Part shown: positions 7,812 to 51,726 of the stretch, in pieces
Layout of the letters: each line of letters opens with the position of its first letter
Position numbering within the stretch: position 1 is the stretch's first letter
Translations under genes and position numbers: made by a program
NCBI RefSeq assembly: GCF_046119375.1
Contig: NW_027362762.1
Span: 654,038,001 to 654,102,000 of the forward strand
Length of the DNA: 64,000 nt
Origin: Phyllobates terribilis
Lineage: Eukaryota
Reading direction: 5' to 3'
The notes under the pieces: model-generated
Databases searched by the model: none
Seen by the model: the letters and a program-made list of their open reading frames with translations, nothing else
Told to the model about the DNA's origin: nothing

Positions 7812-9429
7812 CAGTTAGGTCCATATATATTTGGACAGAGACAAAATTTTTCTAATTTTGGCTCTAGACATTACCACAATGAATTTTAAACAAAACAATT
7901 CAGATGCAGTTGAAGATCAGACTTTCAGCTTTCATTTGAGGGTATCCACATTAAAATTGGATGAAGGGTTTAGGAGTTTCAGCTCCTTAACATGTGCCAC
8001 CCTGTTTTTAAAAGGACCAAAAGTAATTGAACAATTGACTCCAAGGCTATTTCATGGACAGGTGTGGGCAATCCCTTTGTTATGTTATTCTCAATTAAGC
8101 AGATAATTGCATTTGGAACGTTTTGCTGTGAAGTAAACATGTGGTCAAAGGAGCTCTCCATGCAGGTGAAACAAGCCATCCTTAAGCTGCAAAAACAGAA
8201 AAAACCCATCCGAGAAATTGCTACAATATTAGAATTGGCAAAATCTACAGTTTGGTACATCCTGAGAAAGAAAGAAAGCACTGGTGAACTCATCAATGCA
8301 AAAAGACCTGGGCACCCACGGAAGACAACAGTGGTGGATGATCGCAGAATAATCTCCATGATGAAGAGAAACTGCTTCACAGCAGCCAACCAAGTGAACA
8401 ACACTCTCCAGAAGGTAGGCATATCAATATCCAAATCTACCATAAAGAGAAGACTGCATGAAAGTAAATACAGGGGGTTCACTGCACGGTGCAAGCCACT
8501 CATAAGCATCAAGAATAAAAAGGCTAGACTGGACTTTGCTAAAAAAAAATCTAAAAAAGCCAGCACAGTTCTGGAAGAACATTCTTTGGACAGATGAAAC
8601 CAAGATTAACCTCTACCAGAATGATGGAAAGAGAAAAGTATGGCGAAATCGTGGTACAGCTCATGATCCAAAGCATACCACATCATCTGTAAAACACGGC
8701 GGAGGCAGTGTGATGGCTTGGGCAGCATGGCTGCCAGTGGCACTGGGTCACTAGTGTTTATTGATGATGTGACACAGGACAGAAGCAGCCGAATGAATTC
8801 TGATGTATTCAGAGCCGTACTGTGTGCTCAGATCAAGCCAAATGCAGCCAAACTGATTGGTCGTCGTTTCATACTACAGATGGACAATGACCCAAAACAT
8901 AAAGCCAAAGCAACCCAGGAGTTTATTAAAGCCAAGAAGTGGAATATTCTTGAATGGCCAAGTCAGTCACCTGATCTCAACCCAATTGAGCATGCATTTC
9001 ACTTGTTAAAGACTAAACTTCAGACAGAAAGGCCCACAAACAAACAGCAACTGAAAACCACCGCAGTGAAGGCCTGGCAGAGCATCAAAAAGGAGGAAAC
9101 ACAGCGTCTGGTGATGTCCATGAGTTCAAGACTTCATGAAGTCATTGCCAACAAAGGGTTTTCAACCAAGTACTAGAAATGAACATTTTATTTACAATTA
9201 TTTAATCTGTCCAATAACTTTTGGTCCCTTTAAAAACAGGGTGGCACATGTTAAGGAGCTGAAACTCCTAAACCCTTCATCCAATTTTAATGTGGATACC
9301 CTCAAATGAAAGCTGAAAGTCTGAACTTCAACTGCACCTGAATTGTTTTGTTTAAAATTCATTGTGGTACTGTCTAGAACCAAAATTAGAAAAATGTAGT
9401 CTCTGTCCAAATATATATGGACCTAACTG
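7812..9429 (+). mobile_element. Full-length Tc1-family transposon (1618 bp) with long TIRs
   Basis: CAGTTAGGTCCATATATATTTGGACAG...CTGTCCAAATATATATGGACCTAACTG with about 220-bp inverted repeats and TA on both sides. Confidence 0.95.
8139..9176 (+). pseudogene. Tc1 transposase (DD34E type) with frameshifts
   Basis: HTH N-terminus, [27 protein letters not shown]. It is split over three frames near 8545 and 8725. Confidence 0.92.
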
Positions 9430-10303: not shown

Positions 10304-10546
10304 TAGTGATGAGCGAACCTGCTCGGATAAGGGGTTATCTGAGCACGCTCAGGTCACAATTGAGTATCTTCGGCATGCTTGAAAAATAGGTTCAAGTCAC
10401 CGCAGCAGCATGTCTAGTGGCTGTTTGACAGCCGTAACGCATGCATGGATTGCCTGTTTGTTATTTTTCGAGCATGCCGAAGATACTCGGTTAGCACCCG
10501 AGCGTGCTCGGATAACCCGTTATCCGGGCATGTTCGCTCATCACTA
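10304..10546. mobile_element. hAT-type MITE (243 bp), largely palindromic
   Basis: TIR TAGTGATGAGCGAAC / GTTCGCTCATCACTA. 8-bp TSD GTGAGTAT / ATGAGTAT (7 of 8 match). It interrupts the Tc1 codons LYVSI|LQDEL. Confidence 0.9.
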
Positions 10547-10579
10547 ATGAGTATCCTACAAGATGAGTTATTTCATAGA

Positions 10580-10730
10580 CTAGAGTCGCCTGCTCTTGCA
10601 CGAGGTCGGTCCCAGAGTGGCACCTGGTCCACCCTCCCGGTCCCTCCTTGGTTGACGGAGTCGACTGAGCGGCCTTGTAGCCAGGGTCGGTCCGAGTGGG
10701 CACTTAGTTACACCCCTCTGGTCCTTCTTT
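10580..10730 (+). mobile_element. Fragment of a family-A-like LTR 3' end
   Basis: GGTCGGTCCCAGAGTGGCACCTGGTCC...TTACACCCCTCTGGTCC aligns by eye with 6205-6325. Confidence 0.65.
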
Positions 10731-10744
10731 GTACAGTGGTTCTA

Positions 10745-13538
10745 CCATCCAGACCTGTAACATCCACCATCTCATTCACCCCCCCGACCTATCTATCAAC
10801 GTCAATGGCTGTTCATTCTCCCCAGTCCTGCAAGCTCGCTGCCTTGGGGTAACTTTGGAGTCTGATCTCCCTTTCAAACCACATATCCAAGCTCTTTCCA
10901 CTTCCTGCCAACTATAACTCAAAAACTCTGGATCTGCACATTCCTCAGCAAAGACTCTGCAAAACACTAGTGCACGCCCTCATTATCTCCCACCTTGATT
11001 ACTGCAACCTCCAGCACCGTCCCAATTTAGGGTCACCTTGCCGCTGGTGGGACGGCTTGTATACTTTTTTTGATCAAAAATAGTTCACTAAGTACCCTAT
11101 ATTTATTATGCAATTTTGCTTTACATTTATATATAATTATGGTAGGGTATGAGATATATTTTTGTCTTGCTTCTTTTTTGCTAGTGTGAACATGCCTCTG
11201 TTTCTTGTATGTCTGCCATCTTAGACCTCAGTTCACATTGTCTGGTTTTTTGACTTGTTTGCATTCTGTGCAATTTAAGGGTGTGGCATGCCCTTTGTGG
11301 AGCTGATTGGTATATATGTAGCTTACCACGGGCCTAGGTGGTCTGGAGTTGGGACCCGGTCCTATTTGTCTACCCTTTTATATGCATTACTTCAACTTTG
11401 ATATACAGTAAGGTTTTTAATATAGGCAGTATAGGTACCGTCCCAATTTAGGGTCACCTTGCCGCTGGTGGGACGGCTTGTATACTTTTTTTGATCAAAA
11501 ATAGTTCACTAAGTACCCTATATTTATTATGCAATTTTGCTTTACATTTATATATAATTATGGTAGGGTATGAGATATATTTTTGTCTTGCTTCTTTTTT
11601 GCTAGTGTGAACATGCCTCTGTTTCTTGTATGTCTGCCATCTTAGACCTCAGTTCACATTGTCTGGTTTTTTGACTTGTTTGCATTCTGTGCAATTTAAG
11701 GGTGTGGCATGCCCTTTGTTGAGCTGATTGGTATATATGTAGCTTACCACGGGCCTAGGTGGTCTGGAGTTGGGACCCGGTCCTATTTGTCTACCCTTTT
11801 ATATGCATTACTTCAACTTTGATATACAGTAAGGTTTTTAATATAGGCAGTATAGGTACCGTCCCAATTTAGGGTCACCTTGCCGCTGGTGGGACGGCTT
11901 GTATACTTTTTTTGATCAAAAATAGTTCACTAAGTACCCTATATTTATTATGCAATTTTGCTTTACATTTATATATAATTATGGTAGGGTATGAGATATA
12001 TTTTTGTCTTGCTTCTTTTTTGCTAGTGTGAACATGCCTCTGTTTCTTGTATGTCTGCCATCTTAGACCTCAGTTCACATTGTCTGGTTTTTTGACTTGT
12101 TTGCATTCTGTGCAATTTAAGGGTGTGGCATGCCCTTTGTTGAGCTGATTGGTATATATGTAGCTTACCACGGGCCTAGGTGGTCTGGAGTTGGGACCCG
12201 GTCCTATTTGTCTACCCTTTTATATGCATTACTTCAACTTTGATATACAGTAAGGTTTTTAATATAGGCAGTATAGGTACCGTCCCAATTTAGGGTCACC
12301 TTGCCGCTGGTGGGACGGCTTGTATACTTTTTTTGATCAAAAATAGTTCACTAAGTACCCTATATTTATTATGCAATTTTGCTTTACATTTATATATAAT
12401 TATGGTAGGGTATGAGATATATTTTTGTCTTGCTTCTTTTTTGCTAGTGTGAACATGCCTCTGTTTCTTGTATGTCTGCCATCTTAGACCTCAGTTCACA
12501 TTGTCTGGTTTTTTGACTTGTTTGCATTCTGTGCAATTTAAGGGTGTGGCATGCCCTTTGTTGAGCTGATTGGTATATATGTAGCTTACCACGGGCCTAG
12601 GTGGTCTGGAGTTGGGACCCGGTCCTATTTGTCTACCCTTTTATATGCATTACTTCAACTTTGATATACAGTAAGGTTTTTAATATAGGCAGTATAGGTA
12701 CCGTCCCAATTTAGGGTCACCTTGCCGCTGGTGGGACGGCTTGTATACTTTTTTTGATCAAAAATAGTTCACTAAGTACCCTATATTTATTATGCAATTT
12801 TGCTTTACATTTATATATAATTATGGTAGGGTATGAGATATATTTTTGTCTTGCTTCTTTTTTGCTAACCTCCAGCACTGTGGCTTCCTTTCCAACACTC
12901 TCACACCCCTCCAATCTATCCAAAACTCTGCTGCCCGACTAATCCACCTGTCACCCTGATATTCCCCGGCCTCTCTTCTCTGTCAATTCTTTCACTGGCT
13001 CCCCATTGCCCAGAGACTCCAGTTCCAAACCCTAACCATGGCATACAAAGCCATCTACAACCTGTCTCCTGCATACATCTGTGACCTAATCTCCCGATAC
13101 ATACCTGCATGCAACCTCTGATCCTCACAAGATCTCTTGCTGTACTCCCCTCTTATCTGCTCTTCCCACAATCGCATGCAAGATTTGTCCCGTGCATCCC
13201 CCCTACTCTGGAACTCTCTACCCTAACATATCAGACTCTCGCCTACCGTGGAAACCTTCAAATGGAACCTGAAGACCTGCTTCTTCTGACAAGCCTTCAA
13301 CCTGCAGTAACCCTTGCTTCACCATACCACTGCACGACCAGCTCTACCCTCACCTACTGTATCCTCACCCATCCCTTGTTGATTGTGAGCCCTCGCCGGC
13401 ATGGTCCTCGCTCCTCCTGTACCAGTCGCCATCATGTTTTGTTCAATATTATTGCAATTGTTTTTGTATGTATACCCCTTTTCACATGTAAAGCGCCATG
13501 TAATAAATGGTGCTATAACAATAAATAATTATAATAAT
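10745..13538 (+). mobile_element. 5'-truncated L2 LINE (RT C-terminus and 3' UTR) interrupted by the 421-bp array
   Basis: ARCLGVTLESDLPFKPHIQ...DYCN resumes after 12866. The 3' end GCGCCATG...AATAAATAATTATAATAAT is like the L2 3' end at 31349. Confidence 0.85.
11018..12866 (+). repeat. Tandem array of a 421-bp unit, 4.39 copies, near-identical, flanked by a 12-bp TSD
   Basis: Units start at 11018, 11439, 11860, 12281 and 12702. AACCTCCAGCAC occurs at 11006-11017 and 12867-12878. The only difference I noticed is TTTGTGGAG in copy 1 versus TTTGTTGAG. Confidence 0.97.
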
Positions 13539-14649
13539 CTGCACATGTTTTATTGTACCATCTGTGGCTGTTGTCCTCTTGACTGCTGAAAGTAAAAGTT
13601 AACCTGTTCCACCGTTAACCTGACTCCTGACTCTTCCGTATTCCTCCTCACTTATATCATGGGGAACGCCATCACCATCACATGGGGGAACAGTAAAAGC
13701 GATGTTAAACCTCCACACACACACACAGCTGTGTGCCCTTTATTACATTGTCTCTGGAGCGCTAGGCGCCGGGCACGGCCACCACCGGCCGTGTGGCAGA
13801 AAAAAAGGATTCGACATATGCCCTGTATGCTGGAGGGCTTCCCCCTGCGCTCTGAAAATTGCATATACTCAAGTGAATCAACCAGTATGCACCAACTTTG
13901 GGAACGTGTAGGAGAGACCTGGAATCAGATTTCGGTCGAGACATGCTTGAACCATGCCGAGAAGGATTAAGGAAGTGTTGGAAGCCAAAGTTAGATTTAC
14001 AATATACTAGCAAAATAATAAAATTAAAATTTAGATTCTTAGGAGCAAAACAGTAACAATGCAGTGACATGACAAGAATCTGCATAACCAGTCATATGCT
14101 AAATAGTTGCAAGTCAAATTTATGTATGAGATAGCCAAGATGCTTGTGTATAAAATGATGGGAGTCTCACGTTTGAAGCAGTTGTGGATGGTGAGATATT
14201 GAGCCTAAAAGTCAAAAGTTCAAAACATTGTTACCCTTTTGCTCATCAGTGTATATCAGGATTATTCCTGCTCTGTCCATGAACTGTTTGAGTGTTGGAT
14301 GACAACAAAAACATTTTTAACAGAGTTAAATTTGCTGCAACTTGTGAACCTCTTGAACGACTGAATGTTGCTAACGGTTTTCACGCTGCTTATATAGCTA
14401 TAAAATTCCAAAGTCGGCAGTTTTTAACTGCTTATTAAGCAGTCTTCCAATTACTTGTATCGATTGCATATTCAGCATTTCTTTTTGCATATTTAGCATA
14501 TCTAAATAACATAATTATAATTATATATAACGTTACATTATTACTGTAAGAGTTCTTAGTAAACAGTGTTTTATGGAAAAAACGGACATGACTGGAGGAA
14601 ATGGATGTGATTTTTGGATTCACCACACCAAAATTCATAAACATCACGT

Positions 14650-20458: not shown

Positions 20459-21663
20459 TAAAGAGCTGGCTGAGTGATAGAAAGCAGAGGGTGGTTATCA
20501 ATGGAGTAAGCTCAGGGTGTGTCAGGGTTACTAGCAGGGTGCCTCAAGGGTCTGTCTTGGGCCCTATATTATTTAATATATTTATTAATGATCTAGTGGA
20601 AGGGTTGCATAGTAAAATAGCAATATTTGCAGATGATACTAAACTTTGTAAAGTAGTTAATGCAGATGAGGATAGGGCACAGCTACAGGAGGATTTAGAT
20701 AAATTGGGGAGTTGGGCCAAAAAATGGCAAATGGGTTTCAATGCCGATAAATGTAAGGTCATGCACATGGGAAAGAAAAACAGCAGTCACCCATACATAT
20801 TAAATGGGAAACCGTTGGGGAAATCTGACATGGAGAAGGACCTGGGCGTCTTGGTTAACAGCAAATTAAATTGGAGTGCCCAGTGTCAGGCAGCAGCTGC
20901 GAAGGCAAATAGAGTCATGGCATGCATCAGAAGAGGAATAGGGGCACATGATGAGAACATTGTTCTTCCTCTGTATAAAGCGCTGGTAAGGCCGCACTTA
21001 GAATATTGTGCACAGTTCTGGGCTCCGGTGCTCAAGAAAGACATATTGGAGCTAGAGAGGGTACAAAGGAGGGCGACTAAGGTAATAAAGGGAATGGAGG
21101 GACTAGAATACCCAGAGAGGTTGTCAAAATTAGGCCTATTTACGTTGGAAAAGAGAAGGCTTAGGGGAGACCTCATAAACATGTATAAATACATCAGGGG
21201 GCAGTACAGAGATCTCTCCCATGACCTGTTTATACCAAAGATGGTGACAAAGATAAGGGGACACACTATGTGTCTGGAGGAAAGGAGGTTCCTGCACCAG
21301 CATAGAAGGGGATTCGTTACGGTCAGAGCCGTGAGACTCTGGAACTCTCTGGGAGAGGAAGTGGTGATGTCCAACTCACTTAATGAGTTCAAGAGAGGCC
21401 TGGACGCCTTTCTTGAGAACAATAAAATTACATCTTATGCTTAGTGATAGTTAATTAATCCAGGGATTTAATCTGACTGCCAGATTGGAGTCGGGAAGTG
21501 AATTTTTCCTCAATGATGTAAATTGGCCTATACCGCATGGGGTTTTTTTGCCTTCCCCTGGATCAACGCTGCGGAATAGCTGCAGTGCACAAGAAATAGG
21601 CTGAACTGGATGGACGCTTGTCTTTTTTCGGCCTTTTAAACTATGTAACTATGTAACTATGTA
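20459..21663 (+). mobile_element. Young 5'-truncated CR1 LINE
   Basis: An uninterrupted RT frame, followed by a 3' UTR ending in (ACTATGTA)x3. Confidence 0.92.
20491..21444 (+). CDS. CR1 ORF2 reverse transcriptase, C-terminal 317 aa (5'-truncated, no native start)
   Basis: [52 protein letters not shown]. Confidence 0.9.
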   Translation: MVINGVSSGCVRVTSRVPQGSVLGPILFNIFINDLVEGLHSKIAIFADDTKLCKVVNADEDRAQLQEDLDKLGSWAKKWQMGFNADKCKVMHMGKKNSSHPYILNGKPLGKSDMEKDLGVLVNSKLNWSAQCQAAAAKANRVMACIRRGIGAHDENIVLPLYKALVRPHLEYCAQFWAPVLKKDILELERVQRRATKVIKGMEGLEYPERLSKLGLFTLEKRRLRGDLINMYKYIRGQYRDLSHDLFIPKMVTKIRGHTMCLEERRFLHQHRRGFVTVRAVRLWNSLGEEVVMSNSLNEFKRGLDAFLENNKITSYA

Positions 21664-25254: not shown

Positions 25255-30627
<5,373 letters not shown>

Positions 30628-33600
30628 ACAATGACCCAAAACACAATTCCAAAAGCACTATAAAATGGTTTGAGAGAAAGCACTGGAGACTTCTAAGGTG
30701 GCCAGCAATGAGTCCAGACCTGAATCCCATAGAACACCTGTGGAGAGATCTCAAAATGGCAGTTTGGAGAAGGCACCCTTCAAATATCAGGGACCTGGAG
30801 CAGTTTGCCAAAGAAGAATGGTCTACAATTCCAGCAGAGCATTGTAAGATACTCATTGATGGTTACCGGAAGTGGTTGTTCACAGTTATTTTGGCTAAAG
30901 GTTGTGCAACCAAGTATTATGCTGAGGGTGCCAATACTTTTGTCTGGCCCATTTTTGGAGTTTTGTGTGAAATGATCCATAATTTGATTTTTGCTTCATT
31001 CTCTTTTGTGTTTTTTCCTTGCAAGCAAATTAAATGAAGATAATAATACCAAAGAATTTGTGATTGCAATCATTTTCAGGAAGAAACTGGGTATTATCTG
31101 ACACAATTGCAGGGGTGCCAATACTTTTGACTACCACTGTACACTATATAAAAAGACACATATGCATGTTTTACTCAATATCTGACATGTAATCAGAATA
31201 AACCTTTCCCATTTTTAGGTCCATTAGGATTATCATAATTTTTAATATTTGCCAAATGCCAGAATAATGAGAGAGAGAGAGAGAATGTTTTAATGCACTT
31301 TTATTACTTACTGCAAAGTCAAAAGTTTACATACATCAAGATTACTATTATTATTATTAATTTTTATAGCGCCATTGATTCCATGGCGCTGTACATAAGA
31401 AGAGGTTACATACCAAATACAGATATCACTTACAGTAAACAAACTAACAATGATCGAACGGTCTTGCGGGCTTACATTCTACAGGAATGGGGGATGAGAA
31501 CAGTAGGTTGAAGGGTTGCAGTAGCTCCGGTGTTGTTAAGGTGGCAGCAAGCAAGGTCATGGCAGGCTGTAAGATTGTTTGAAGAGATGGGTTTTCAGGT
31601 TCCGTCTGAAAGATCCAGGTGTGGTGGATAATCGGACATGTTGAGGCACAGAATTCCATAGGACGGGGGATATTAGGGAGAAAACTTGGAGGCGATTGCG
31701 TGAGGAACGAATAAGTGTGGAGGAGAGAAGGAGGTCTTGGGAGGACCACAGGTTACGTGAGGGAATATATTGGGAGATTAGTTCAGAGATGTATGGAGGA
31801 GAAAGGTTATGGATGGCTTTGTAGGTCAGTGTTAGTAGTTTGAACTGGATACGCTGGGGAAATGAGAGCCAGTGAAGGGATTTGCAAAGGGGGGTAGCAG
31901 AGGAGTAGCGAGGTGAGAGATGAACAAGTTGTGCAGCAGAGTTGAGGATGGACTGGAGGGGTGCAAGAGTGTTAGCAGGTAGGCCACAGAGGAGGATGTT
32001 GCAGTAGCCAAGGCGGGAGATGATGAGGGCATGCACAAGCAGTTTAGTAGATTGAGGGTTGAGGAAAGGAGGGATTCTGGAAATATTTTTGAGCTGGAGG
32101 CGACAGGAGGTGGCGAGAGCTTGGATGTGGGGTTTGAAGGTCAGTGCAGAGTCAAGGGTTACTCCAAGGCAGCGGATTGTTGGTAGAGTGGAAAGGGTGA
32201 TGTCATTTATTGTGATAGAAAGATCAGGTGGAAAAGATATGCGAGATGGGGGAAAGATAATGAGTTCAGTTTTGTCCACATTGAGCTTGAGGTAGCGAAA
32301 GGAGAAGGAGTATAAGGCTGCTAGACATGCTGGGATTCTGGAGAGCAGAGATGTGAGAGGTAGATCTGGGTGTCATCAGCGTACATATGGTACTGGAAGC
32401 CATGGGATTTTATGAGCTGTCCCAGGCCAAGGGTATAGATTGAGAAGAGTAAGGGTCCTAGGACAGAGCCTTGAGGGACTCCAACAGAGAGGGGGCGGGG
32501 TGAGGAGGTAGTGTGGGAGTGGGAGATGCTAAATGTGCAGTTAGAACGGTATGAGGAGATCCAAGATAGGGCAAGGTCTTTGATGCCAAAGGAAGAGAGC
32601 ATCTGTAGTAGGAGGCAGTGGTCAAATGTCTCGAAAGAAGAGGACAGGTCAAGAAGAAAAAGTACAGAGAATTGTCTGTTAGCTTTGGCTGTAAGTCATT
32701 GGTGATTTTGGTAAGGGCAGTTTCGGTGGAATGGTGGGGGCGGAAGCCAGATTGTCGGTTGTCGAAGAGAGAGTTAGATGAAAAGTGGGGGGAAAATTCA
32801 GTGTGAACGTGTTGCTCAAGGAGTTTGGAGGCAAATGGGAGCAGCGATATGGGGTGATAGCTGGACAAGGCAGTTTGGTCGAGGGATGGCTTTTTGAAGA
32901 TGGGCGTGATTGTGGCATGTTTGAAGGCAGCCGGGAAAGTACCAGAAGATAGTGATAGGTTGAAGAGATAGGTTAGGGATGGGATGAGTGTGGGAGTGAG
33001 GTTGGGGAGGAGGTGAGATGGGATGGGGTCGAGTGCACATGTTGTGAGGTGTGATTTGGAGAGGAGACGAGTAAGGTCTCTTTCCGTGATGTTGGGAAGA
33101 GAGGTTATGGGGGTAGGGAAATGATGTGGAAAACAAAGGGGTTGTGGTAGTCGGAGAGTAAAGACTTGCCGTGTTTGGTCAATCTTATTTTTGAAGCGTG
33201 TGGCAAACTCCTCAGCAGAGATGACGGAGATCGAAGGTGGCAGTGGAGGGCGGAAGAGAGAGTTAAAAGTGTTGAATAGCTGTTTGGGGTTGTAGGATAG
33301 GGAGAATATGAGGGTTATGAAGTAGGCTTGTTTAGCAGAGGTGAGTTATGATTTGAATGCGAGTGTTGCTTGTTTGAATGCAGTGAAGTCATCTTGAGTA
33401 TGTGTTTTCTTCCAACGCCGCTGTTATGATCTGCAACAAGTACTAAGGAAAGAAAGGGGAAAGCTATCCCTACAATAAGACTAAGCTGAATCCCTACGAT
33501 GTGGCGGGCTGCCTGTTCCTTGCAAACAGACCCGCCTTAGTCCTCGGCTAGTCTGAACGAAGACCTATAGCATAAAGGAAGGGGTCCCTAAAAGAACTAA

Positions 33601-39809: not shown

Positions 39810-42800
39810 ATGAGTGGAAAAAGGCCTGCTGCTGGTGGAAAGGGGAATAGGCGTGTTGGGAAGAGGAAAAAAGGTTGTGTCCGTGGGGTAGGTGTTAAAG
39901 CAACAGTAACATCTGCAGAAGAAAGACCATCTTCCAGCCGAACTAAAATGTCTACTCCTTTTAGCGGACAATGTGATAAGATCCCTTTCTTACGGCCACG
40001 CCAATCGCTACAAATTCCAGATGAGGCACAAAAACAGCAGGTGCTTCAACGGATATCAAGTGCTCCTTTAAGTGGGCTCTCCTCCACATCAACTTCAACA
40101 TCACAAATACTCCAGTCCTCAAAGGTGTCACCCCAATCGCACTTGCTTCCTCACAGCTCCCAAATCTCCAGCTGCCCGTCTGAGTATGAGGTAGAACAGA
40201 TGGTTGAGTCTGCAGAGCTGTTTACTCATACTATAGCCTGGGAATCAGAGGTCGACTCCAGCGCTTCTGTGAATCCAGACGAGGAAATGATCTGCACTGA
40301 TGCCCAGAATCTTTATGAGTCGGATCCAGGACCAAACGCAGAAGGTTCTGACCATAATGTAGACCCTCATTCCCAAACTGTAACTCCTGTTGGTGGAGAC
40401 AATGAGGAAGACGATGATAAGACTCAAATACCTGATAGGAGCGACAACTTTAGTTTTTTGTCAGGGCAGGAACAGGTTGGCTCTGAGGACGACGGGTGTG
40501 ATAACGCACAGGGTGATGATGATGAGGTTGGAGATCCCACTTACTGTCAACCCACAGTCAGCCAAGAGATGAGGTCAGCAGAGGAGGTGGCGGAAGATGC
40601 TAGTGACGACGAGGTCAGGTTGCACCTTCCTGGACAGAGACGTAGTACTGGAAGCACGTCAACAACTGCATCCTAAAACACAACTCTGCCTCTCACCACA
40701 AGTCGTGGTGGCTCTTCAGGTCGCATGGGTGCTAAGCCTTGCATAGCCTGGGCATTTTTTCAGATCGATAAAGATGACCCAACTCGTGTTATCTGTAACA
40801 TTTGTCAGCAAAAGCTAAGTAGAGGCCAAAAAATACATAGTTTGAGTACTTCATGCATGAACCGGCACATGGACATGAAGCATAAGTTGCAGTGGGAAGC
40901 TCAGTGTGCTACAATGCGGCCTAGCCGGCCGGGCCAACCACCGTCTGCCATATCTTGAGCATCCGCGGCCTCTTCATCCTCTGTGACTGGGGGGACAGCA
41001 GTCACACCTGTTTTGGGGCGCAGACCTGCCACCTCTTTACCCGCAACAGCCAGCGTGATTGGCAGGTCATCATTTTCTTTGGAGGTGGTAACATAAGCTG
41101 GTGTTGAGCGCTGTCCGACATCGATAGCACCACCCTTGGATCAAGGCAACCTAACATGTCCGCCTGCATCTTCCTCACAGACCGGCAGTTTGCCGGGGAC
41201 ACCCTTATCAACCCCGTCTAAGCACAATAGCCAGCCCTCGGTCCCTCAGATGTGGACAAGTAAAAGACCATTTCCTCCTAGCCATGAGAAAGCTAAGAGG
41301 TTGAATTTCACCATCTGCAAGTTCTTGGCTACAGAAATGCTGCCTTTCCGCCTGGTGGACACAGAGGATTTTCGAGACCTTATGTCCGTCGCAGTGCCCC
41401 AGTACCAGATGCCCAGTCGGCACTACTTCTCAAAGAAAGGTGTGCCTGCGCTCCACCAGCATGTCGCACACAACATCACCGCTTCTTTGAGAAACTCTGT
41501 GTGTGACAGGGTGCATTTCACCACAGACACTTGGACGAGTAGGCATGGACAGGGGCGTTACATGTCGCTGACTGGGCACTGGGTAACTATGGTGACAGCA
41601 GGACAAGGGGCTGCTGTCCAAGTCTTGCCGTCCCCACGAGTTGTGCGTCAATCCTCTTTATGTCAAAGTTCCTCCACTGCTTCTGCCTCCTCAACCTCCT
41701 CTCGGTCTTCCACCTGCACCCAAAGCCTGTCTGGTCATGCCACAAGCTTTCTAACTGCGCAGAAGGGATCCTGCACACCTCCTTACTATGCTGGCACTAG
41801 GGCTCAACGTCATCAGGCGGTTTTTACATTGAAATGTCTGGGAAATGTGAGTCACACAGCTGAGGAGTTGTGGTCAGCTCTGGAGAACCAATTTCATGAA
41901 TGGTTGTCTCCACTGGACCTGAAACCAGGGAAGGCCGTGTGCGACAATGCTGCAAACCTGGGTGCGGCCCTTCGCCGGGGCAATGTCACACACGTGCCTT
42001 GTATGGCTCACGTGTTGAACCTGGTTGTCCAGCAATTTTTAGCCCACTATCCCAGACTAGATGGCCTTCTGCAGAGGGCACGGTCGCTGTGTGCTCACTT
42101 TCGCCGTTCGCATCCCGCAGCTCAGCGACTTACATCTCTACAGAAGTCGTTGGGCCTGCCACTTCACCTGCTAAAATGCGATGTGCCTACCCGGTGAAAT
42201 TCAACTCTGCACATGTTGCAGCAAACTGTGGCAGCACCGACAAGCCCTGGTGCAATATGTTCTGACGTATAGCCTGGGCCAACGAGATCCAGAGGTGGGG
42301 CAAATCACGCTGGAGGAGTGGTCTCAGATCAGGGACCTATGCACCCTTCTGCACAGTTTTGAAATGGCGACGAAGATGTTTAGTGCTGACGATGCCATTA
42401 TCAGCCTGACTATTCCGGTGATTTACATGCTGGAGCACATGTTAAACAGAATTCGGAGTCAGGTGGTGGCACAAGAGGAGGTGGAGGAAGTAGAGGAGGA
42501 GGAGTTGTATGCGGAAGGGCTAACATCTGCAAGGTCCAGACGGTCGGCAGCACCAAGGCGGCAGGCATGTGAGGGTGGGGGAGATGGTTTTACCAGGGCG
42601 CATGGTAGCAGCCAAACTAGTGAGGAAGGTGCAGGAGCCCAGGAAGAAGTGGAGGACGAACTGATGGAAGACTCATCAGATGAGGGAGACCTTGATCACA
42701 TTTCTGTTGTGCGAGGTTGGGGGGAGAGGACAGAGGAAGGAAGCATGATTGTTACCTCGCCACCAACACAACAGGGACTTGGTGCTCCTGGATGCGCAAC

Positions 42801-43512
42801 ACACATGAGTGCCTTCTTGCTGCACTACCTGCAACATGACCCTCGAATTGTGAGAATTAGAAATAATCCTGACTACTGGGTTGCCACACTGTTAGATCCC
42901 CGGTACAAAAGTAAATTTGCAGAAATTATTCCTGCCATAGAAAGGGATGCACACATGCAGGAGTATCAGCAGAGACTGTTGCAGAATCTTACATGTGCTT
43001 TTCCACAAAATACCAGTGGTGCACGTAGTGAATCTCACAGTTCCAACTTGCCAACCGTGGGACCGTCAAGTGTTCAGCACTCAAACCGTAACAGAACCAC
43101 AGTATCTGCTGGTAACATCAATTTTGCGGAATCATTTCACCACTTTTTTAGCCCATCCTTTGCAAGGCCACAGGAGACAAGAAGTCTGACACATAGTCAA
43201 CGCCTAGAGACGATGGTACAGGAGTATCTCCAAGTAAACATTGAAGCCACGACTGTGTCACTGGACCCTTGCTCTTTTTGGGCTTCCAATCTGGATAAAT
43301 GGCCGGAGCTAGCCACTTACGCCTTGGAGATCTTGTCATGCCCCGCAGCCAGCGTTCTGTCTGAACGTGTGTTCAGCGCTGCTGGTGGTGTGCTGACAGA
43401 TAAGCGCACGCGGCTCTCCACTGATAATGTAGACAGACTCACGTTCATAAAGATGAACAAATCATGGATCCGAAACGACTTTTCTACCCCTGTGTCATCC
43501 TGGGGAGAGTAA
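39810..43512 (+). pseudogene. hAT transposase (BED finger, DDE core, dimerisation domain), about 1230 codons, disrupted by stops and frameshifts
   Basis: BED: AWAFF...CNICQQKLSRG...MNRHMDMKH. Core: HFTTDTWTS, CDNAANL, HVPCMAHVLNLVVQ, CDVPTR. C-terminus: LSCPAASVLSERVFSAAGGVLTDKRTRLSTDNVDRLTFIKMN. Confidence 0.93.
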
Positions 43513-47215: not shown

Positions 47216-50200
47216 TCTAATTACAAATTTTTAACTGCATCTAGCCCAGGAAATACTTTGTGCCTAGTAGCAATGTCTGCTAGTCAGCGGATTATCCCGG
47301 CTGTTAAGCAAGCTACACCACCTGTAGTTTGGACACTTAATTTTTTCAAAGGAAATGCTTCGGGACCACGGGATACTCAGTGAAGAGCATCAGGAGGCAC
47401 CCCAAGGCATAGGGGCTGGGACTGGCAGTAGGATGCCTTGCGGTGGACAGCCGAGCTCGATCCTTATAAAAGCTTTTTAACTGCAGCAGCTTTAGTGGAC
47501 GCTACTGGAGCTGGAATTACGCGGCTGCTGGCATGAGACTTGCCCTCCAATAGATCCTTGTAAATGGATTTAAAGTGTATTCATTCAAATTAGAGAGACA
47601 ATTTAAATTAAAAAGCTTAGAGCTGCCTCCACCACAGGGGGGCTCGCTCGACCCACCAGCAGACAGGCACCAGTATTGGGAGAGGGGGGCTGGCCGTCAG
47701 GGTTCACCGCGGCTCTGGCACAAACCCGGCGACACGGAGGTGGCACGGGCAGGAGCGGACTGAACGTGTCGGCTTCTCACTTTTTGGATTTTAGAAGGGC
47801 ATGACATGCCTATATCTGTGTCTCCCCCTCCTTTTACTCCTCCACCTCTTTTCTTTTCGCATGACTATATGTACTTGTCACTTTTCCATGTGTTAGTTGT
47901 GTCTTCTGAGCAGTTTGTCAGCTTTTGGACACCTTTGAAGGTGTTTTCTATGTGTTTCTATGTGTTTTTGTTTGCCTGCCATTGGTTTTAACGGTGTTCG
48001 AAGGTGTTCGACGAACAGTTCGACGAACAGTTCGGCGAACACACGGGTGTTCGACGAACCGAACCGAACTCGAACACTACGGGGGTGGCTCAACACTACT
48101 TACCAATCAAAGGTCTCAAGATGTCATTAACAAGGTTCTGAAAAAATGCAGGTGCATTGGTAAGACCAAAAGGCAACATCAGATTCTCAAAATGACCTAC
48201 CGGAGTGTTAGCAGCAGTTTTCCATTCATCACCCACCTTCACTCGTAACAAATTGTATGCCCCCCGGAGATAAATCTTAGAGAACCACTTGGCCCCCACT
48301 AACTGGTTAAACAAGTCAAGAATTAACGGCAATGGGTAGGAATTGCGTACAGTAATTTTATTAATTTCACGAAAATCCAGACATGGATGTAAACCCCCGT
48401 CCTTTTTTTTAACAAAAAAAAATCCAACTGCCACAGGCGACTTAGAAGGTCTAATGTGACCAGCAGCCAGGCCAGTCTGTATGTACTCCTCCAAGGCCTC
48501 TCTTTCAGGGATAGTCAGATTAAACAAGTGACTCTTGGGAAGAGTAGCTCCTGGAACAAACTCAATGGCGCAATCATAATCCCTATGAGGAGGTAAAACT
48601 TGCGACTCCTCCTCTGAAAAAACCCTCCAAAAATCTTGAATAGGTACAGGTAATTCCCCTTTTTCCACAGCTGCAATGCGACCATTACAACATTTATCAT
48701 AGCACTTTGGACTCCAAGACTTTATCATATTAGTAGACCAGTCCAGCAAAGGATTGTGCAGTTTTAACCAAGGCAATCCTAGAACGACTGGAGAGGGTAA
48801 ATTATTTAATACAACCAAGTCCAAAATTTCTTGGTGAAGTCCATTGATAGTGAGGGGAAATGCAGCAACCTTGTGAGTAATACATTTCAAGGGAGTGTTA
48901 TCAATTGCAATCACAGAAATAGGTGATGACAAAGGTTTGGATTTCAATTTAAGTTTTTCCAAAAACCCTTTATCAATCACATTAAGTGTTGAACCACAAT
49001 CCACAAATACCTGAAATTCAATCAAATTTTCCTGCAAAGTAGTACTCTATGAAAGAAATACTCCTGCAGAGCATAAACAAGCTATACAGGCGTACCTGAC
49101 CTTTTTTTTTCTTTACTTAAATGAAGCTCACAAAACTTAATCAAATGGTCAGCTTAACATCAATAAAGACACAATCCCTCGGCGAACCTCCGGTCTCTTT
49201 CCTGAGAGCAGAGCGACATCGCCCCAAACTCCATCGGCATTCCGCCGTCTGAGCAGATTTTCTGGGGACTAGGACCTGGCATTACAGGAGTCTTTACCTC
49301 ATTCTGCCTAGATCTCAGCCTCCTATCCACACGAACAGCTAATTGCATGGCGTCCTGCAGAGTCTCAGGTGCGGGGAATGCAATTAGCAAATCCTTAACC
49401 TTTTCACTCAGACCAGCGAGAAATAGACATTTCAGAGCAGGATCACTCCATTTGACTTCTGAAGCCCATCTTCTGAAGTGTGTCCAATAATTTTCAACAT
49501 CACCTGACCCTGATTCAAACGCCTGAGTTCTGCCTCAGCAGATGAGATTCGATCAGGATCATCATATAATAGACCCATAGCAGAAAAAAATTCTTCTACC
49601 CACCTTAAGCATGGATCATTAGGTTTGAGAGAAAAGGCCCACCCTTGTGGTTCATTGCGCAAAAGTGACATAATAAAACCAATGCGCTGTGATTAATTCC
49701 CAGAGGACCTTGGTCTCAAACAAAAATGTAACAAACAAGCATCTTTAAAGGAAAAAAATCTTGCTGTTTACCATAAAAAACATCAGGCAGTCCTACCTTG
49801 GGTTCCACAAAATGCGCTCCAGAACAGCTACTCACGTGTTGCTGGAGCTCGGCCACCTCCAGAGACAATCCCTGCAAATGTTGAGCCAAATCCTGAACGG
49901 AAGCCATACTGATTCCCGAATTTCTTTCCTTTTAGTTTTTTTTGGGCTGGACTTACTGTTATGATCTGCAACAAGTACTAAGGAAAGAAAGGGGAAAGCT
50001 ATCCCTACAGTAAGACTAAGCTGAATCCCTGTAGCGGGCTGCCTGTTCCTTGCGAACAGACCCACCTTAGTCCTTGGCTAGTCTGAACGAAGACCTATAG
50101 CATAAAGGAAGGGGTCCCTAAAAGAACTTAGGACTGGAACAAAAATAGGACACCTCCTGAACAAAGAAGGTTGTTGCAGAACACAAAAAGATAAACTGAC

Positions 50201-50766: not shown

Positions 50767-51726
50767 CTAGTGTGTGTCCATATGTGTGGGTGGCTGAGGA
50801 GGACCACTGAGTAAGTCCAAAGATGAAGTAAGCGACAAGAGTTTGGATACTGCTGACTGGCGAGTGTCAGTGGGGATGTTGAAATCGGCCATGATGATTG
50901 TGGGAATGTCAGCAGAGAGAAAGTAAAGAAGCCAGGAGGAGAATTGGTCAATAAAGGCAGTGATCGGGCCCGGAGGTCGGTATATGACAGCCACTTGGAG
51001 GTTGGAGGGAGAGTAAATGCGGACAGAGTGGACTTCAAAAGATGGGAGAATAAGGGAGGGAAGAGGAGGAGTAGGGCTAAAGGTGCAGTTGTTAGAGAGG
51101 AGAAGACCCACTCCTCCACCATGTCTGTTACCAGGGCGAGGAGCGTGGGTGAATTGGACGCCGCCGTAACACAGCGCAGCAGGGGAGGCAGTGTCAGAGG
51201 GTGTCAGCCATGTCTCTGTGATGCCCAGGAAGGAGAGAGGACGAGAGGTAAAGAGGTCGTGGACAAAATGGAGCTTGTTGCAGATGGAGTGTGCATTCCA
51301 GAGTGCTCCAGAGAGAGGGAGCAACGGGGTGGGCATCAGGAGGACCGGTTTTGTGTAAGAGAGGTTGTGGTAGTTTTCAGTTGGTTTGATGCGATAGGTG
51401 GGGGAATTGGTGGAAGGTGCAAGCTGTGGGGGATTGGGAGATATGTCGCCAGCAGTGAGGAGAAGCAGAGAGAGGGAGAGCAGGTGGGAGAAGGAGAGTG
51501 TCCGGCTTGTTTTATATTTTGGTAGGATCGATCTGAGGCTGAGGAGCAGGTCTGTAGATGAGGTTAGGTGGGGAGGTAGGAGGGAAGGAGAGATGATGAT
51601 TTGGTTAGAGGGTGCTGGGGTTTGGGGATAGCAAAGGAGAGTGAGGATTAGTGGGGCAAAAACAGTAAGGGCATATGTAAGCATAATGAATGTTAAGTGT
51701 GAATAAGTAAGAGAATCTAAGTACAA
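50767..51726 (-). CDS. L2 ORF N-terminus: hydrophobic leader, decayed 2A-like peptide and APE endonuclease (frameshifts beyond 50767)
   Basis: LLSLSLLLLTAGDISPNP-PQ precedes ALWNAHSICNK...ITETWL...GGGVGLLL...IYRPPG...ADFNIP. Confidence 0.8.
   Translation of the reverse strand: MYLDSLTYSHLTFIMLTYALTVFAPLILTLLCYPQTPAPSNQIIISPSLLPPHLTSSTDLLLSLRSILPKYKTSRTLSFSHLLSLSLLLLTAGDISPNPPQLAPSTNSPTYRIKPTENYHNLSYTKPVLLMPTPLLPLSGALWNAHSICNKLHFVHDLFTSRPLSFLGITETWLTPSDTASPAALCYGGVQFTHAPRPGNRHGGGVGLLLSNNCTFSPTPPLPSLILPSFEVHSVRIYSPSNLQVAVIYRPPGPITAFIDQFSSWLLYFLSADIPTIIMADFNIPTDTRQSAVSKLLSLTSSLDLLSGPPQPPTHMDTH

What the first reader, a model, noticed from the sequence alone, without database searches (positions are those of the whole stretch)
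11017..11099. HDV-like ribozyme fold at the start of every 421-bp unit (five copies)
Seen (copy 2 coordinates): P1 CCGUCCC 11438-44 pairs with GGGACGG 11470-76; P3 ACC pairs with GGU around an 8-nt loop UUGCCGCU; P2 UAGGGUC 11449-55 pairs with G(U)ACCCUA 11513-20; an AU-rich P4 hairpin; and CUAA (11509-12) just before P2'. This order is the HDV nested double pseudoknot, with a C75-like C and a U20/G25-like loop pair. The left insertion junction (11016-11018, allowing for microhomology) coincides with the predicted cleavage site. The partial fifth unit still holds a full fold, so cleavage would release exact monomers. Caveats: +1 is C rather than the usual G, P1.1 would be a single G-C plus U-U (CPEB3 has C-G plus U-U), and P2 has a bulge. 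Known retrozymes use hammerheads, so an HDV-type one would be notable.
Basis: partly seen in the sequence, partly recalled or inferred. Interest (0 to 1): 0.78.

Follow-up and report, generated by a model that had tools for sequence, protein, structure and literature searches.

The report
Frog tandem retroelement with HDV-like ribozyme
A recently inserted block of 4.4 identical 421-base repeats in a frog-like genome starts exactly where a predicted hepatitis-delta-type self-cutting RNA would cut, so it looks like a mobile "retrozyme" using a ribozyme class not reported for such elements; cutting is not yet shown.

Summary
Window 11017-12867 holds 4.4 head-to-tail copies of a 421-bp non-coding unit, with one substitution in 1.85 kb. 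The array is flanked by a perfect 12-bp target-site duplication inside an old L2/CR1-like LINE, and a paralogous LINE copy confirms the empty site. Each unit opens with an 83-nt stretch that forms every helix of the HDV nested double pseudoknot, in the right order and spacing.

It fails the published HDV descriptor and every Rfam model. It fits only after four relaxations: +1 C-G instead of G•U, a flipped single-pair P1.1, one L3 mismatch and one P2 bulge. The validated L1Tc ribozyme shares +1 pyrimidine-G, P3' GGU and J4/2 CUAA.

The fold alone is not significant per window (about 0.5 chance hits per 128 kb). It is rare per unit (7 of 4000 shuffles). Its predicted cleavage site also falls inside the 3-nt ambiguity of the insertion's 5' end, giving a joint chance of about 1e-5.

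No relatives could be fetched, so covariation and activity remain untested. My best reading (about 0.6) is a non-autonomous, retrozyme-like retroelement whose units are delimited by an atypical HDV-like ribozyme. That would be a new variant of known kinds.

The parts
11017..12867 (+). Tandem array: four full 421-bp units (starting 11017, 11438, 11859, 12280) plus a 167-bp partial unit (12701-12867). Non-coding, 38% GC.
   Evidence: TRF. Self-BLAST shows 100% identity apart from one substitution. Longest ORFs are 39 aa or less. GC content.
11006..11017 (.). Left copy of the 12-bp target-site duplication aacctccagcac. Its last two bases, AC, could equally be unit positions 421 and 1.
   Evidence: Sequence. 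Empty site confirmed against the paralog.
12867..12878 (.). Right copy of the 12-bp target-site duplication. Its first A could equally be unit position 167.
   Evidence: Sequence.
11017..11099 (+). Predicted HDV-like ribozyme, copy 1. The predicted cleavage is 5' of C11017.
   Evidence: Relaxed descriptor hit.
11438..11520 (+). Predicted HDV-like ribozyme, copy 2.
11859..11941 (+). Predicted HDV-like ribozyme, copy 3.
12280..12362 (+). Predicted HDV-like ribozyme, copy 4.
12701..12783 (+). Predicted HDV-like ribozyme, copy 5, in the partial unit.
11017..11023 (+). P1 5' strand CCGTCCC (copy 1). It pairs with 11049-11055 GGGACGG: 7 Watson-Crick pairs, with C-G at the cleavage site.
11028..11034 (+). 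P2 5' strand TAGGGTC. It pairs with 11092-11099 GTACCCTA, with T11093 bulged.
11035..11048 (+). P3 (ACC/GGT) enclosing L3 TTGCCGCT. L3 matches the published L3 signature TYYHCG*Y at 7 of 8 positions. U11038 and G11043 correspond to HDV U20 and G25. G11040 would pair with C11056 as a single-pair P1.1.
   Evidence: Descriptor; match.
11058..11087 (+). P4: a weak AU-rich hairpin that includes the palindrome TTTTTGATCAAAAA.
   Evidence: I3; -0.4 kcal/mol on its own
11088..11091 (+). J4/2 CTAA. C11088 (C11509 in copy 2) is the presumptive catalytic cytosine.
   Evidence: Fits CNRA* of the descriptor. L1TcRz also has CUAA at this position.
11730..11780 (+). Segment (unit nt 293-343, copy 2) that pairs with ribozyme nt 1-49 in the minimum-energy fold of the whole monomer. 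It is a candidate attenuator or rod-forming strand.
   Evidence: (I1)
11564..11587 (+). Segment (unit nt 127-150, copy 2) that pairs with ribozyme nt 56-83, including P2', in the whole-monomer fold.
   Evidence: (I2)
11299..11299 (+). The only difference among the copies: G in unit 1, T in units 2-4. It lies outside the ribozyme.
31676..32174 (-). Paralogous copy of the host LINE without the insertion. Used to verify the empty site.

Best explanation
The array is a recent retro-insertion of a multimer of a 421-nt non-coding RNA. It behaves as a non-autonomous, retrozyme-like retroelement in a poison-frog-like genome.

Each unit begins with an atypical HDV-like self-cleaving ribozyme that cuts immediately 5' of unit nucleotide 1. 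Array transcripts would fold the first 83 nt co-transcriptionally into the double pseudoknot and cleave. This gives unit-length RNAs, or partly processed multimers, with a 5'-OH and a 2',3'-cyclic phosphate.

Once the rest of the unit is made, the ribozyme strands are absorbed into long-range helices, giving a compact fold with 65% of bases paired. That fold would suit ligation to a circle, as in hammerhead retrozymes.

A reverse transcriptase supplied in trans, of LINE or Penelope type, then copies the RNA at a nicked target. The template could be a linear multimer whose 5' end was made by the ribozyme. It could also be a circle copied round and round until the template is cut at the ribozyme site. 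Either route yields a TSD-flanked multimer that starts at ribozyme position +1 and ends at an arbitrary internal position.

Shown here: the array, the near-identity of units, the TSD, the empty site, the fit to a relaxed HDV descriptor, and the coincidence of predicted cleavage site and insertion 5' end.

Inferred: catalysis, circularisation, the RT source and which template form was used.
For: - All HDV helices are present in the canonical order and spacing. P1.1, P4, C-N-R-A and P2' are contiguous, as in the published descriptor.
- L3 matches the conserved signature at 7 of 8 positions, including the U20, C24 and G25 equivalents. J4/2 is CUAA.
- In 128 kb of window, both strands, only the five copies fit the relaxed descriptor. 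Of 4000 dinucleotide shuffles of the unit, 7 give any hit.
- The predicted +1 nucleotide (11017) lies inside the 3-nt ambiguity of the 5' junction of a verified insertion. That is about 3 of 842 strand-positions, so the joint chance is about 1e-5.
- The two unusual pairs have a precedent. In the in-vitro-active L1TcRz, P1' is GCCAGGG ending in G37 (so +1 is a pyrimidine), P3' is GGU and J4/2 is CUAA. The trypanosomatid ribozymes are described as differing from HDV and R2 in the orientation of the P1 G-C pairs and in P1.1, and the Webb descriptor is called too restrictive.
- HDV-like ribozymes define the 5' ends of LINEs and of their non-autonomous parasites (SIDEs, NARTc), with microhomology at 5' junctions.
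- Unit size, low GC, tandem layout, a TSD longer than 4 bp and lack of coding capacity match animal non-LTR retrozymes.
- No hammerhead core is present on either strand, and no other Rfam ribozyme matches.
- The whole-unit fold has z = -2.3 and sequesters the ribozyme strands.
Against: - No Rfam HDV-type model scores at E<=10, even on 106 nt alone.
- The published descriptor is not met. The relaxations were chosen after seeing the candidate.
- The relaxed motif occurs about 0.5 times per 128 kb by chance.
- The +1 base is C paired to G, whereas the G•U wobble matters in HDV. A G1A change nearly abolishes CPEB3 ribozyme cleavage.
- P1.1 is a single pair. P4 is very weak (-0.4 kcal/mol) and P2 has a bulge.
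- The pseudoknot is not the local minimum-energy fold: -22.9 kcal/mol for the local MFE, against about -14.3 plus a P2 duplex of -7.6.
- The −1 base is A, which is less favourable than U or C in HDV (abstract).
- Four internal sites were uncleaved in the inserted template.
- Only one locus is available, so there is no covariation, no second independent 5' end and no RNA data.
- My descriptor script was not run on a positive control.
Confidence: 0.6

Rival explanations
1. The HDV-like fold is a chance resemblance. The 421-nt unit is an ordinary satellite- or SINE-like transcript that was retroposed as a multimer. Its 5' end was set by a transcription start site or by RT run-off, not by self-cleavage.
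For: The relaxed descriptor hits 0.5 times per 128 kb in shuffles, and 3.8 times if L3 may carry two mismatches. There is no Rfam support. The candidate deviates at the cleavage-site pair, which is important in HDV and CPEB3. The relaxations were post hoc. In L1Tc the transcription start coincides with the ribozyme site, so a start site at unit position 1 is conceivable.
Against: This reading needs two independent coincidences: a full fold somewhere in the unit (7 of 4000 shuffles) and its +1 falling within 3 nt of the RNA's 5' end. RT stalling at the P1 hairpin would stop 3' of the stem, near unit nt 40, not at nt 1 (inference). The conserved L3 and J4/2 letters are also matched.
Confidence: 0.22
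2. The ribozyme is real, but the locus is a one-off endogenisation. A partly processed rolling-circle multimer of an exogenous viroid-like or delta-like circular RNA replicon was captured by a LINE reverse transcriptase. It is not a resident retrozyme family.
For: The insertion is a multimer with a ribozyme-defined 5' end, an arbitrary 3' end and no poly(A). The fold is compact, with 65% of bases paired. Viroid-like circular RNAs with diverse ribozymes are abundant in metatranscriptomes. No second copy or fragment is in the 64-kb window.
Against: There is a ribozyme in one polarity only; the minus strand gives no descriptor hit. The 38% GC and CpG observed/expected of 0.33 resemble the host genome (0.42) and animal retrozymes rather than most viroid-like RNAs. 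Copy number in the genome could not be examined.
Confidence: 0.1
3. The array arose at the DNA level, by reintegration of extrachromosomal circular DNA, by replication slippage, or by unequal exchange of a pre-existing repeat. No RNA intermediate was involved.
For: Tandem arrays with near-identical units can arise by DNA amplification. There is no poly(A) tail.
Against: A clean 12-bp TSD and an intact empty site in the paralog indicate a single staggered-cut insertion of the whole multimer. A DNA route gives no reason for the array to start at the fold's +1 position. No terminal inverted repeats or Helitron-type ends are present.
Confidence: 0.05

Closest known systems
[quoted passage not shown]
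   Same: The ribozyme sits at element nucleotide +1 and defines the 5' end. The +1 base is a pyrimidine paired to G at the foot of P1, and the C-rich strand of P1 is the 5' strand. P1.1 is a single pair, P3' is GGU and J4/2 is CUAA. Non-autonomous derivatives carry only the ribozyme end. The TSD is about 12 bp.
   Different: L1Tc elements are single-copy-structured LINE or SIDE insertions with a poly(A) tail and an internal promoter. Here there are head-to-tail multimers, no poly(A) and a vertebrate host. Sequence homology was not shown; only parts of L1TcRz could be read from primer sequences.
R2 ribozyme and SIDEs (short internally deleted elements) of Drosophila
   Same: An HDV-like ribozyme processes the element's 5' end from a co-transcript. 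Non-autonomous parasites keep the ribozyme. 5' junctions are formed with chance microhomology.
   Different: R2 and SIDEs insert site-specifically in 28S rDNA, share the R2 3' UTR and are not tandem multimers. The R2 core follows the G-first consensus.
Animal non-LTR retrozymes (type I hammerhead tandem repeats giving circRNAs)
   Same: Tandem units of 150-450 bp, below 50% GC, non-coding, with TSDs longer than 4 bp, and one ribozyme per unit so that cleavage gives unit-length RNA.
   Different: The defining type I hammerhead is absent: there is no CUGANGA on either strand and no Rfam hit. The predicted ribozyme is of HDV type, which lies wholly 3' of its cut. The link to Penelope-like pLTRs was not examined.
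CPEB3 ribozyme (mammalian intronic HDV-like ribozyme)
   Different: CPEB3 has G1•U at the cleavage site, and G1A nearly abolishes activity. It is a single conserved intronic copy, not a mobile repeat.
Hepatitis delta virus genomic and antigenomic ribozymes
   Same: A nested double pseudoknot. L3 matches U-x-x-x-C-G-C-U, and J4/2 is CUAA as I recall for the antigenomic form. The ribozyme strands are sequestered in the compact fold of the full-length RNA.
   Different: No delta antigen, a ribozyme in one polarity only, DNA-encoded, 421 nt, and no Rfam RF00094 match.

Membership tests
HDV-like self-cleaving ribozymes | Nested double pseudoknot in the order P1-J1/2-P2-P3-L3-P3'-P1'-J1/4-P4-J4/2-P2', with P2/P3, P3'/P1' and J4/2/P2' directly adjacent | tested here: met
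   Descriptor scan. P1 7 bp, P2 7 bp with one bulged U, P3 3 bp Watson-Crick, P4 hairpin.
HDV-like self-cleaving ribozymes | L3 of 7-8 nt with signature TYYHCG*Y (the U20, C24 and G25 equivalents) | tested here: met
   L3 is TTGCCGCT, matching 7 of 8 positions. The mismatch is position 3 (G), the partner of the flipped P1.1 pair.
HDV-like self-cleaving ribozymes | P1.1 of 1-2 pairs between L3 positions 2-3 and J1/4 (the consensus has R in J1/4 pairing with C in L3) | tested here: inconclusive
   A single G11461-C11477 pair of reversed orientation plus U•U. The pair is possible but the consensus letters are not met. A single-pair P1.1 is known in L1TcRz.
HDV-like self-cleaving ribozymes | Catalytic C in J4/2 in the context CNRA immediately before P2' | tested here: met
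   CTAA at 11088-91 and 11509-12.
HDV-like self-cleaving ribozymes | Purine (G) at +1 forming a G•U (or G-Y) pair at the cleavage site | tested here: not met
   +1 is C paired with G. A precedent for pyrimidine-G exists in the active L1TcRz. G1A cripples CPEB3.
HDV-like self-cleaving ribozymes | Match to a curated covariance model (Rfam HDV_ribozyme, CPEB3, drz-Agam, HDV-F-prausnitzii and similar) | tested here: not met
   No hit at E<=10 in 2.9 kb or in 106 nt.
HDV-like self-cleaving ribozymes | Covariation that preserves P1, P2, P3 and P1.1 among homologues | not testable with these tools
   The five copies are identical in the fold. Exact-word scans found only chance bacterial matches. ORF-based searches found nothing. 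DNA of the frog assemblies cannot be fetched.
HDV-like self-cleaving ribozymes | Site-specific, divalent-ion-dependent self-cleavage giving a 5'-OH and a 2',3'-cyclic phosphate | not testable with these tools
   Needs a bench assay. Indirect support only: the insertion's 5' end equals the predicted +1.
Animal non-LTR retrozymes | Short (150-450 bp), low-GC, non-coding tandem repeats, with TSDs longer than 4 bp when present | tested here: met
   421 bp x 4.4, 38% GC, ORFs of 39 aa or less, 12-bp TSD. Criteria.
Animal non-LTR retrozymes | A type I hammerhead ribozyme in every unit | tested here: not met
   No CUGANGA on either strand, and no GAAA at all on the + strand. No Rfam hammerhead hit.
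Animal non-LTR retrozymes | Expression as unit-length circular RNA | not testable with these tools
   No transcriptome data are available here.
Animal non-LTR retrozymes | Sequence relationship to the pLTRs of Penelope-like elements | not tested
   No PLE reference sequences were at hand. No similarity of the unit to anything else in the window.
Ribozyme-capped non-autonomous LINE parasites (SIDE / NARTc / SIDER type) | HDV-like ribozyme at element position +1 | tested here: met
   The predicted fold starts at the 5' junction. Activity is untested.
Ribozyme-capped non-autonomous LINE parasites (SIDE / NARTc / SIDER type) | 3' end shared with the partner LINE, or a poly(A) tail, for recognition by the RT | tested here: not met
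   The insertion ends inside a unit (…TTTTTTGCTA) with no poly(A). The unit is not similar to any LINE in the window. Only the LINEs in this window could be compared.

The most novel reading that the evidence does not exclude
This would be the first retrozyme-type element built on an HDV-like rather than a hammerhead ribozyme. It would be a genome-encoded 421-nt RNA in a vertebrate (a dendrobatoid-like frog) that self-cleaves at the start of each unit and circularises. It would then be copied back into DNA as multimers by a LINE-type reverse transcriptase, with the ribozyme cut defining the 5' end of each new insertion. It would also extend the L1Tc-style 'C-first' variant of the HDV fold to vertebrates.
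Probability: 0.45. Interest if true: 0.8.

Novelty: new variant of a known kind. Interest (0 to 1): 0.62.

Why it matters
- **Ribozyme class.** In the literature searched here, retrozymes and other genome-encoded ribozyme circles are defined by hammerheads. HDV-like ribozymes are known as 5' caps of LINEs and their single-copy parasites. An element that combines the HDV fold with the tandem retrozyme life-style would show that the ribozyme module is interchangeable in DNA-encoded RNA circles, as it is in viroid-like and delta-like RNAs.
- **Origin of deltavirus ribozymes.** It would provide a vertebrate genomic source of small HDV-ribozyme RNAs, which bears on where deltavirus ribozymes came from.
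- **Search methods.** It would show that standard descriptors (G at +1, C-G P1.1) and Rfam models miss a whole 'C-first' branch of the family outside trypanosomatids.
- **Insertion mechanism.** The insertion is a rare snapshot of a multimeric template with a ribozyme-defined 5' end. That makes the mechanism (linear multimer versus rolling-circle reverse transcription) directly testable.

Tried and rejected
- **Rfam cmscan.** Three runs: 10500-13400 at E<=10, the whole window at gathering thresholds, and 11425-11530 alone. No HDV, CPEB3, hammerhead, twister, hatchet, pistol or hairpin hit appeared, only noise (SNORD52, two miRNA models).
- **Published HDV descriptors** (loose P4, and with insertion). 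Zero hits.
- **Relatives by exact 22-mer of the core.** Metagenome contigs gave 6 hits and genome contigs gave 11. All lie in a Janthinobacterium-type ABC ATPase gene at 64-67% GC, with no similarity beyond the word, so they are chance matches. Viral contigs gave 0.
- **Relatives through 'proteins' called on the repeat.**
  - Seven unit ORFs are not in the collection.
  - The ATG ORF against 1.84 billion representatives gave one spurious hit. It is a 71-bp tandem repeat mis-called as a 359-aa protein, with no DNA similarity to the unit.
  - The 39-aa ORF is below the tool's minimum length.
  - The 64-aa open frame across the ribozyme complement found no candidate.
- **Fetching related frog genomic DNA.** I tried through homologues of the window's hAT transposase. 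The assemblies are too large and no DNA was returned. The window's own hAT ORF is not on record.
- **Diverged copies in the window.** BLASTN with word size 7 and nhmmer found none.
- **Other features of the unit.** There is no tRNA-like or Pol III origin. ARAGORN finds none, and the + strand has seven T runs of 4 or more, including T7 inside P4, which argues against Pol III read-through.
- **Minus-strand ribozyme,** as in HDV. No descriptor hit.
- **Literature on the cleavage-site pair** (Cerrone-Szakal 2008, Chen 2009, Webb 2009, Ruminski 2011). These papers are not held.
- **Positive control.** My descriptor script was not run on one, because that would have meant typing a long sequence.
Full report
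**1. What is there**

The window holds no N. TRF finds one array at 11016-12867 with period 421, 4.4 copies and 99% matches. In unit register the copies start at 11017, 11438, 11859, 12280 and 12701. Units 2-4 are identical. Unit 1 differs at one base (11299 G versus T), and the fifth unit stops after 167 nt.

The unit is 38% GC. Its longest ORFs are 39 aa or less. It has no tRNA-like part. No other copy, even a diverged one, occurs in the window.

**2. It is a discrete, recent insertion**

The array lies between two perfect copies of aacctccagcac, at 11006-11017 and 12867-12878. I removed the array and one repeat copy. The result aligns gap-free across the junction with a 73%-identical paralogous copy of the same L2/CR1-like LINE tail at 31676-32174, minus strand. 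The whole multimer therefore entered an old LINE in one event that made a 12-bp target-site duplication.

The unit ends in ..AC and continues with A after position 166. The left junction is therefore ambiguous over 11016-11018 and the right junction by one base. There is no poly(A) and there are no terminal inverted repeats.

**3. The host genome**

The surroundings are dense in transposons: Tc1-like, hAT, Gypsy-type integrase and protease/RT, and a LINE endonuclease. CpG is depleted, with observed/expected of 0.42.

The window's hAT ORF is closest to proteins of dendrobatoid frogs: Anomaloglossus at 70% over 97% of the query, and Ranitomeya at 81-89% over parts of it. I take the source to be a poison-frog-like amphibian genome. 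I do not take it for human.

**4. The fold**

I took the published Lupták/RNArobo descriptors for HDV-like ribozymes from the supplement of PMC4870747. They specify:
- P1 GNNNNN*:NNNNNY (or R…Y)
- J1/2 up to 50 nt
- P2 of 6-7 bp
- P3 of 3 Watson-Crick pairs
- L3 TYYHCG*Y
- J1/4 RN
- P4
- J4/2 CNRA*
- P2'

I re-implemented them in a script.

The strict forms give no hit anywhere in the window. I then relaxed four points: any base at +1, any base at the end of P1', any base in J1/4, and one L3 mismatch. One bulge in P2 was also allowed, as in the published 'ins' version. This relaxed form hits only the five copies. All are on the + strand, with +1 at 11017, 11438, 11859, 12280 and 12701, or one base later with a 6-bp P1.

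The layout of copy 1 is:
- P1 11017-23 with 11049-55, seven Watson-Crick pairs
- J1/2 AATT
- P2 11028-34 with 11092-99, T11093 bulged
- P3 ACC/GGT
- L3 TTGCCGCT, 7 of 8 matches to the signature, including the U20, C24 and G25 equivalents
- J1/4 CT
- P4 11058-87
- J4/2 CTAA, with the presumptive catalytic C at 11088

P1.1 would be G11040-C11056 plus U•U. P1.1, P4, C-N-A-A and P2' follow one another without spare nucleotides, as the descriptor demands.

**5. What does not fit**

No Rfam family of HDV type, nor any other ribozyme class, matches at E<=10. This holds in 2.9 kb and in the 106 nt alone. The base at +1 is C paired with G, not G•U. The P1.1 pair is reversed and single. P4 is very weak, at -0.4 kcal/mol on its own.

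The pseudoknotted fold is not the local minimum. The nested part P1+P3+P4 scores -14.3 kcal/mol and a P2 duplex is worth about -7.6. The local MFE, which keeps P1 and P4 but not P2 or P3, is -22.9.

The first base matters in known ribozymes. G1A alone drops CPEB3 cleavage from 92% to 3% (PMC8233481). From memory, and unverified because the paper is not held, reversed pyrimidine-purine pairs at the HDV cleavage site are slow.

**6. A precedent for the odd features**

The L1Tc ribozyme of Trypanosoma cruzi cleaves in vitro at element nucleotide +1 (PMC3185411). The reverse complements of its primers L1Tc55+47r and +77r give nt 27-47 as UGGUGCCAGGGUCUAGUACUC and nt 56-77 as AGAGGAAGCUAAGCGCCUGCUG. 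So P3' is GGU, P1' is GCCAGGG ending in G37, and J4/2 is CUAA. The +1 base is therefore a pyrimidine. The paper describes P1.1 as a single pair.

The follow-up study makes two statements. [quoted passage not shown] It also says the Webb screening rules 'were too restrictive' (PMC4035085).

The frog candidate shares this 'C-first' layout, the same P3 and the same J4/2. I could not show sequence homology.

**7. Is it more than chance?**

On the fold alone, no. The relaxed descriptor hits 0.5 times per 128 kb in 60 dinucleotide shuffles of the window. Requiring the P1.1 pair lowers this to 0.18. Allowing two L3 mismatches raises it to 3.8. Roughly four windows in ten would hold such a motif somewhere.

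Position changes the picture. Only 7 of 4000 dinucleotide shuffles of the unit hold a hit on either strand. The single real hit places its cleavage site inside the three-base window of the insertion's 5' end, which is about 3 of 842 strand-positions. The joint chance is about 1e-5. Even with the loosest descriptor and counting either junction, it stays below about 1e-3.

An HDV-type ribozyme lies wholly 3' of its cut. An RNA 5' end at its first nucleotide is therefore exactly what cleavage predicts. This is also how R2, R4/Dong, RTE, baggins and L1Tc ends are made. RT stalling at the P1 hairpin would stop near unit nt 40, not at nt 1 (inference).

**8. The rest of the unit**

The whole 421-nt + strand folds to -115.4 kcal/mol, with z = -2.3 and 2 of 100 shuffles folding as well. 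The minus strand gives z = -1.4. Folded as a circle, 65% of bases are paired. Ribozyme nt 1-49 pair with nt 293-343, and nt 56-83, which include P2', pair with nt 127-150.

The catalytic fold would thus form only while the RNA is being made, and would be locked away in the finished monomer. I recall the same logic for HDV, and it is proposed for L1Tc downstream attenuators. The minus strand has no HDV-like fold. There is no hammerhead core: CUGANGA is absent from both strands. Three of the unit's five CpGs lie in P1, L3 and P1'. I read that only as a weak hint of constraint.

**9. Mechanism proposed**

The shown and inferred steps are kept apart in the Best explanation section. Array transcripts self-cleave 5' of each unit. 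The monomers, with a 5'-OH and a 2',3'-cyclic phosphate, refold compactly and may be ligated to circles, as hammerhead retrozymes are.

A trans-acting LINE-type or Penelope-type RT primes at a nicked target, with one base of microhomology (…GCTA|A). It then copies one of two templates:
- a linear, partly processed multimer whose 5' end came from cleavage, or
- a circle copied 4.4 times round until the template is cut at the ribozyme.

The cDNA end is joined with one base of microhomology (C11017), the kind of junction described for R2. Four uncleaved internal sites imply a slow or attenuated ribozyme, which fits the C-G cleavage-site pair and the competing folds.

**10. Comparison with known systems, and novelty**

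Retrozymes as described have hammerheads only. Animal retrozymes are 150-450-bp, low-GC tandem repeats with TSDs longer than 4 bp, and a 2026 preprint derives them from Penelope pLTRs. HDV-like ribozymes are known at the 5' ends of LINEs and of non-autonomous SIDE, NARTc or SINE-like elements. They are also known in RNA replicons.

I found no report of a tandem, retrozyme-like DNA element with an HDV-type ribozyme. Several key papers are not held, so this is absence in the searched library, not proof. I rate the finding a new variant of known kinds.

**11. Limits**

- Only one locus is available and the copies are identical, so no covariation can be assessed.
- All routes to relatives failed or are closed.
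- The relaxations of the descriptor were chosen after seeing the candidate.
- My script had no positive control, because I did not type long reference sequences.
No spliced model was involved.

Noticed in passing
window 47499-47618 (-): A 120-nt fragment matching eukaryotic 18S rRNA (Rfam SSU_rRNA_eukarya, 63.8 bits, above gathering). It lies just upstream of a Gypsy-like protease/RT ORF (48096-49037, minus strand). It may be a captured or retroposed rRNA piece.
   Followed up: no
window 8064-8597, 20491-21444, 26489-27421(-), 42181-43512, 48096-49037(-), 50767-51726(-): The window is a transposon graveyard: Tc1-like HTH, RT fragments, Gypsy-type integrase and protease, a hAT dimerisation domain and a LINE AP-endonuclease. 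The hAT ORF's best relatives are from dendrobatoid frogs (Anomaloglossus, Ranitomeya, Dendrobates), which places the source genome.
   Followed up: partly
window 11438-11858 (unit): Three of the five CpG dinucleotides of the unit sit in P1, L3 and P1' of the predicted ribozyme, in a CpG-depleted genome (observed/expected 0.42; unit 0.33).
   Followed up: partly
window 11484-11505 and equivalents: P4 contains a perfect 14-nt palindrome, TTTTTGATCAAAAA, preceded by a T7 run. On the + strand the unit has seven runs of 4 or more T. These would terminate Pol III, so the RNA is probably a Pol II or read-through product.
   Followed up: partly
window 14464-14503: A small 21-bp tandem repeat (1.9 copies) downstream of the host LINE.
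   Followed up: no
L018:7440-10987: An ENA metagenome contig with a 71-bp repeat in about 50 copies that gene callers turned into 'proteins' of 359 and 789 aa. It surfaced as a spurious, repeat-boosted hit to a 37-aa ORF of the unit and has no DNA similarity to it.
   Followed up: yes
L001-L017: The 22-nt core GGGTCACCTTGCCGCTGGTGGG occurs exactly in an ABC-type ATPase gene of Janthinobacterium genomes and related metagenome contigs. The match is a coincidence and does not extend beyond the word.
   Followed up: yes
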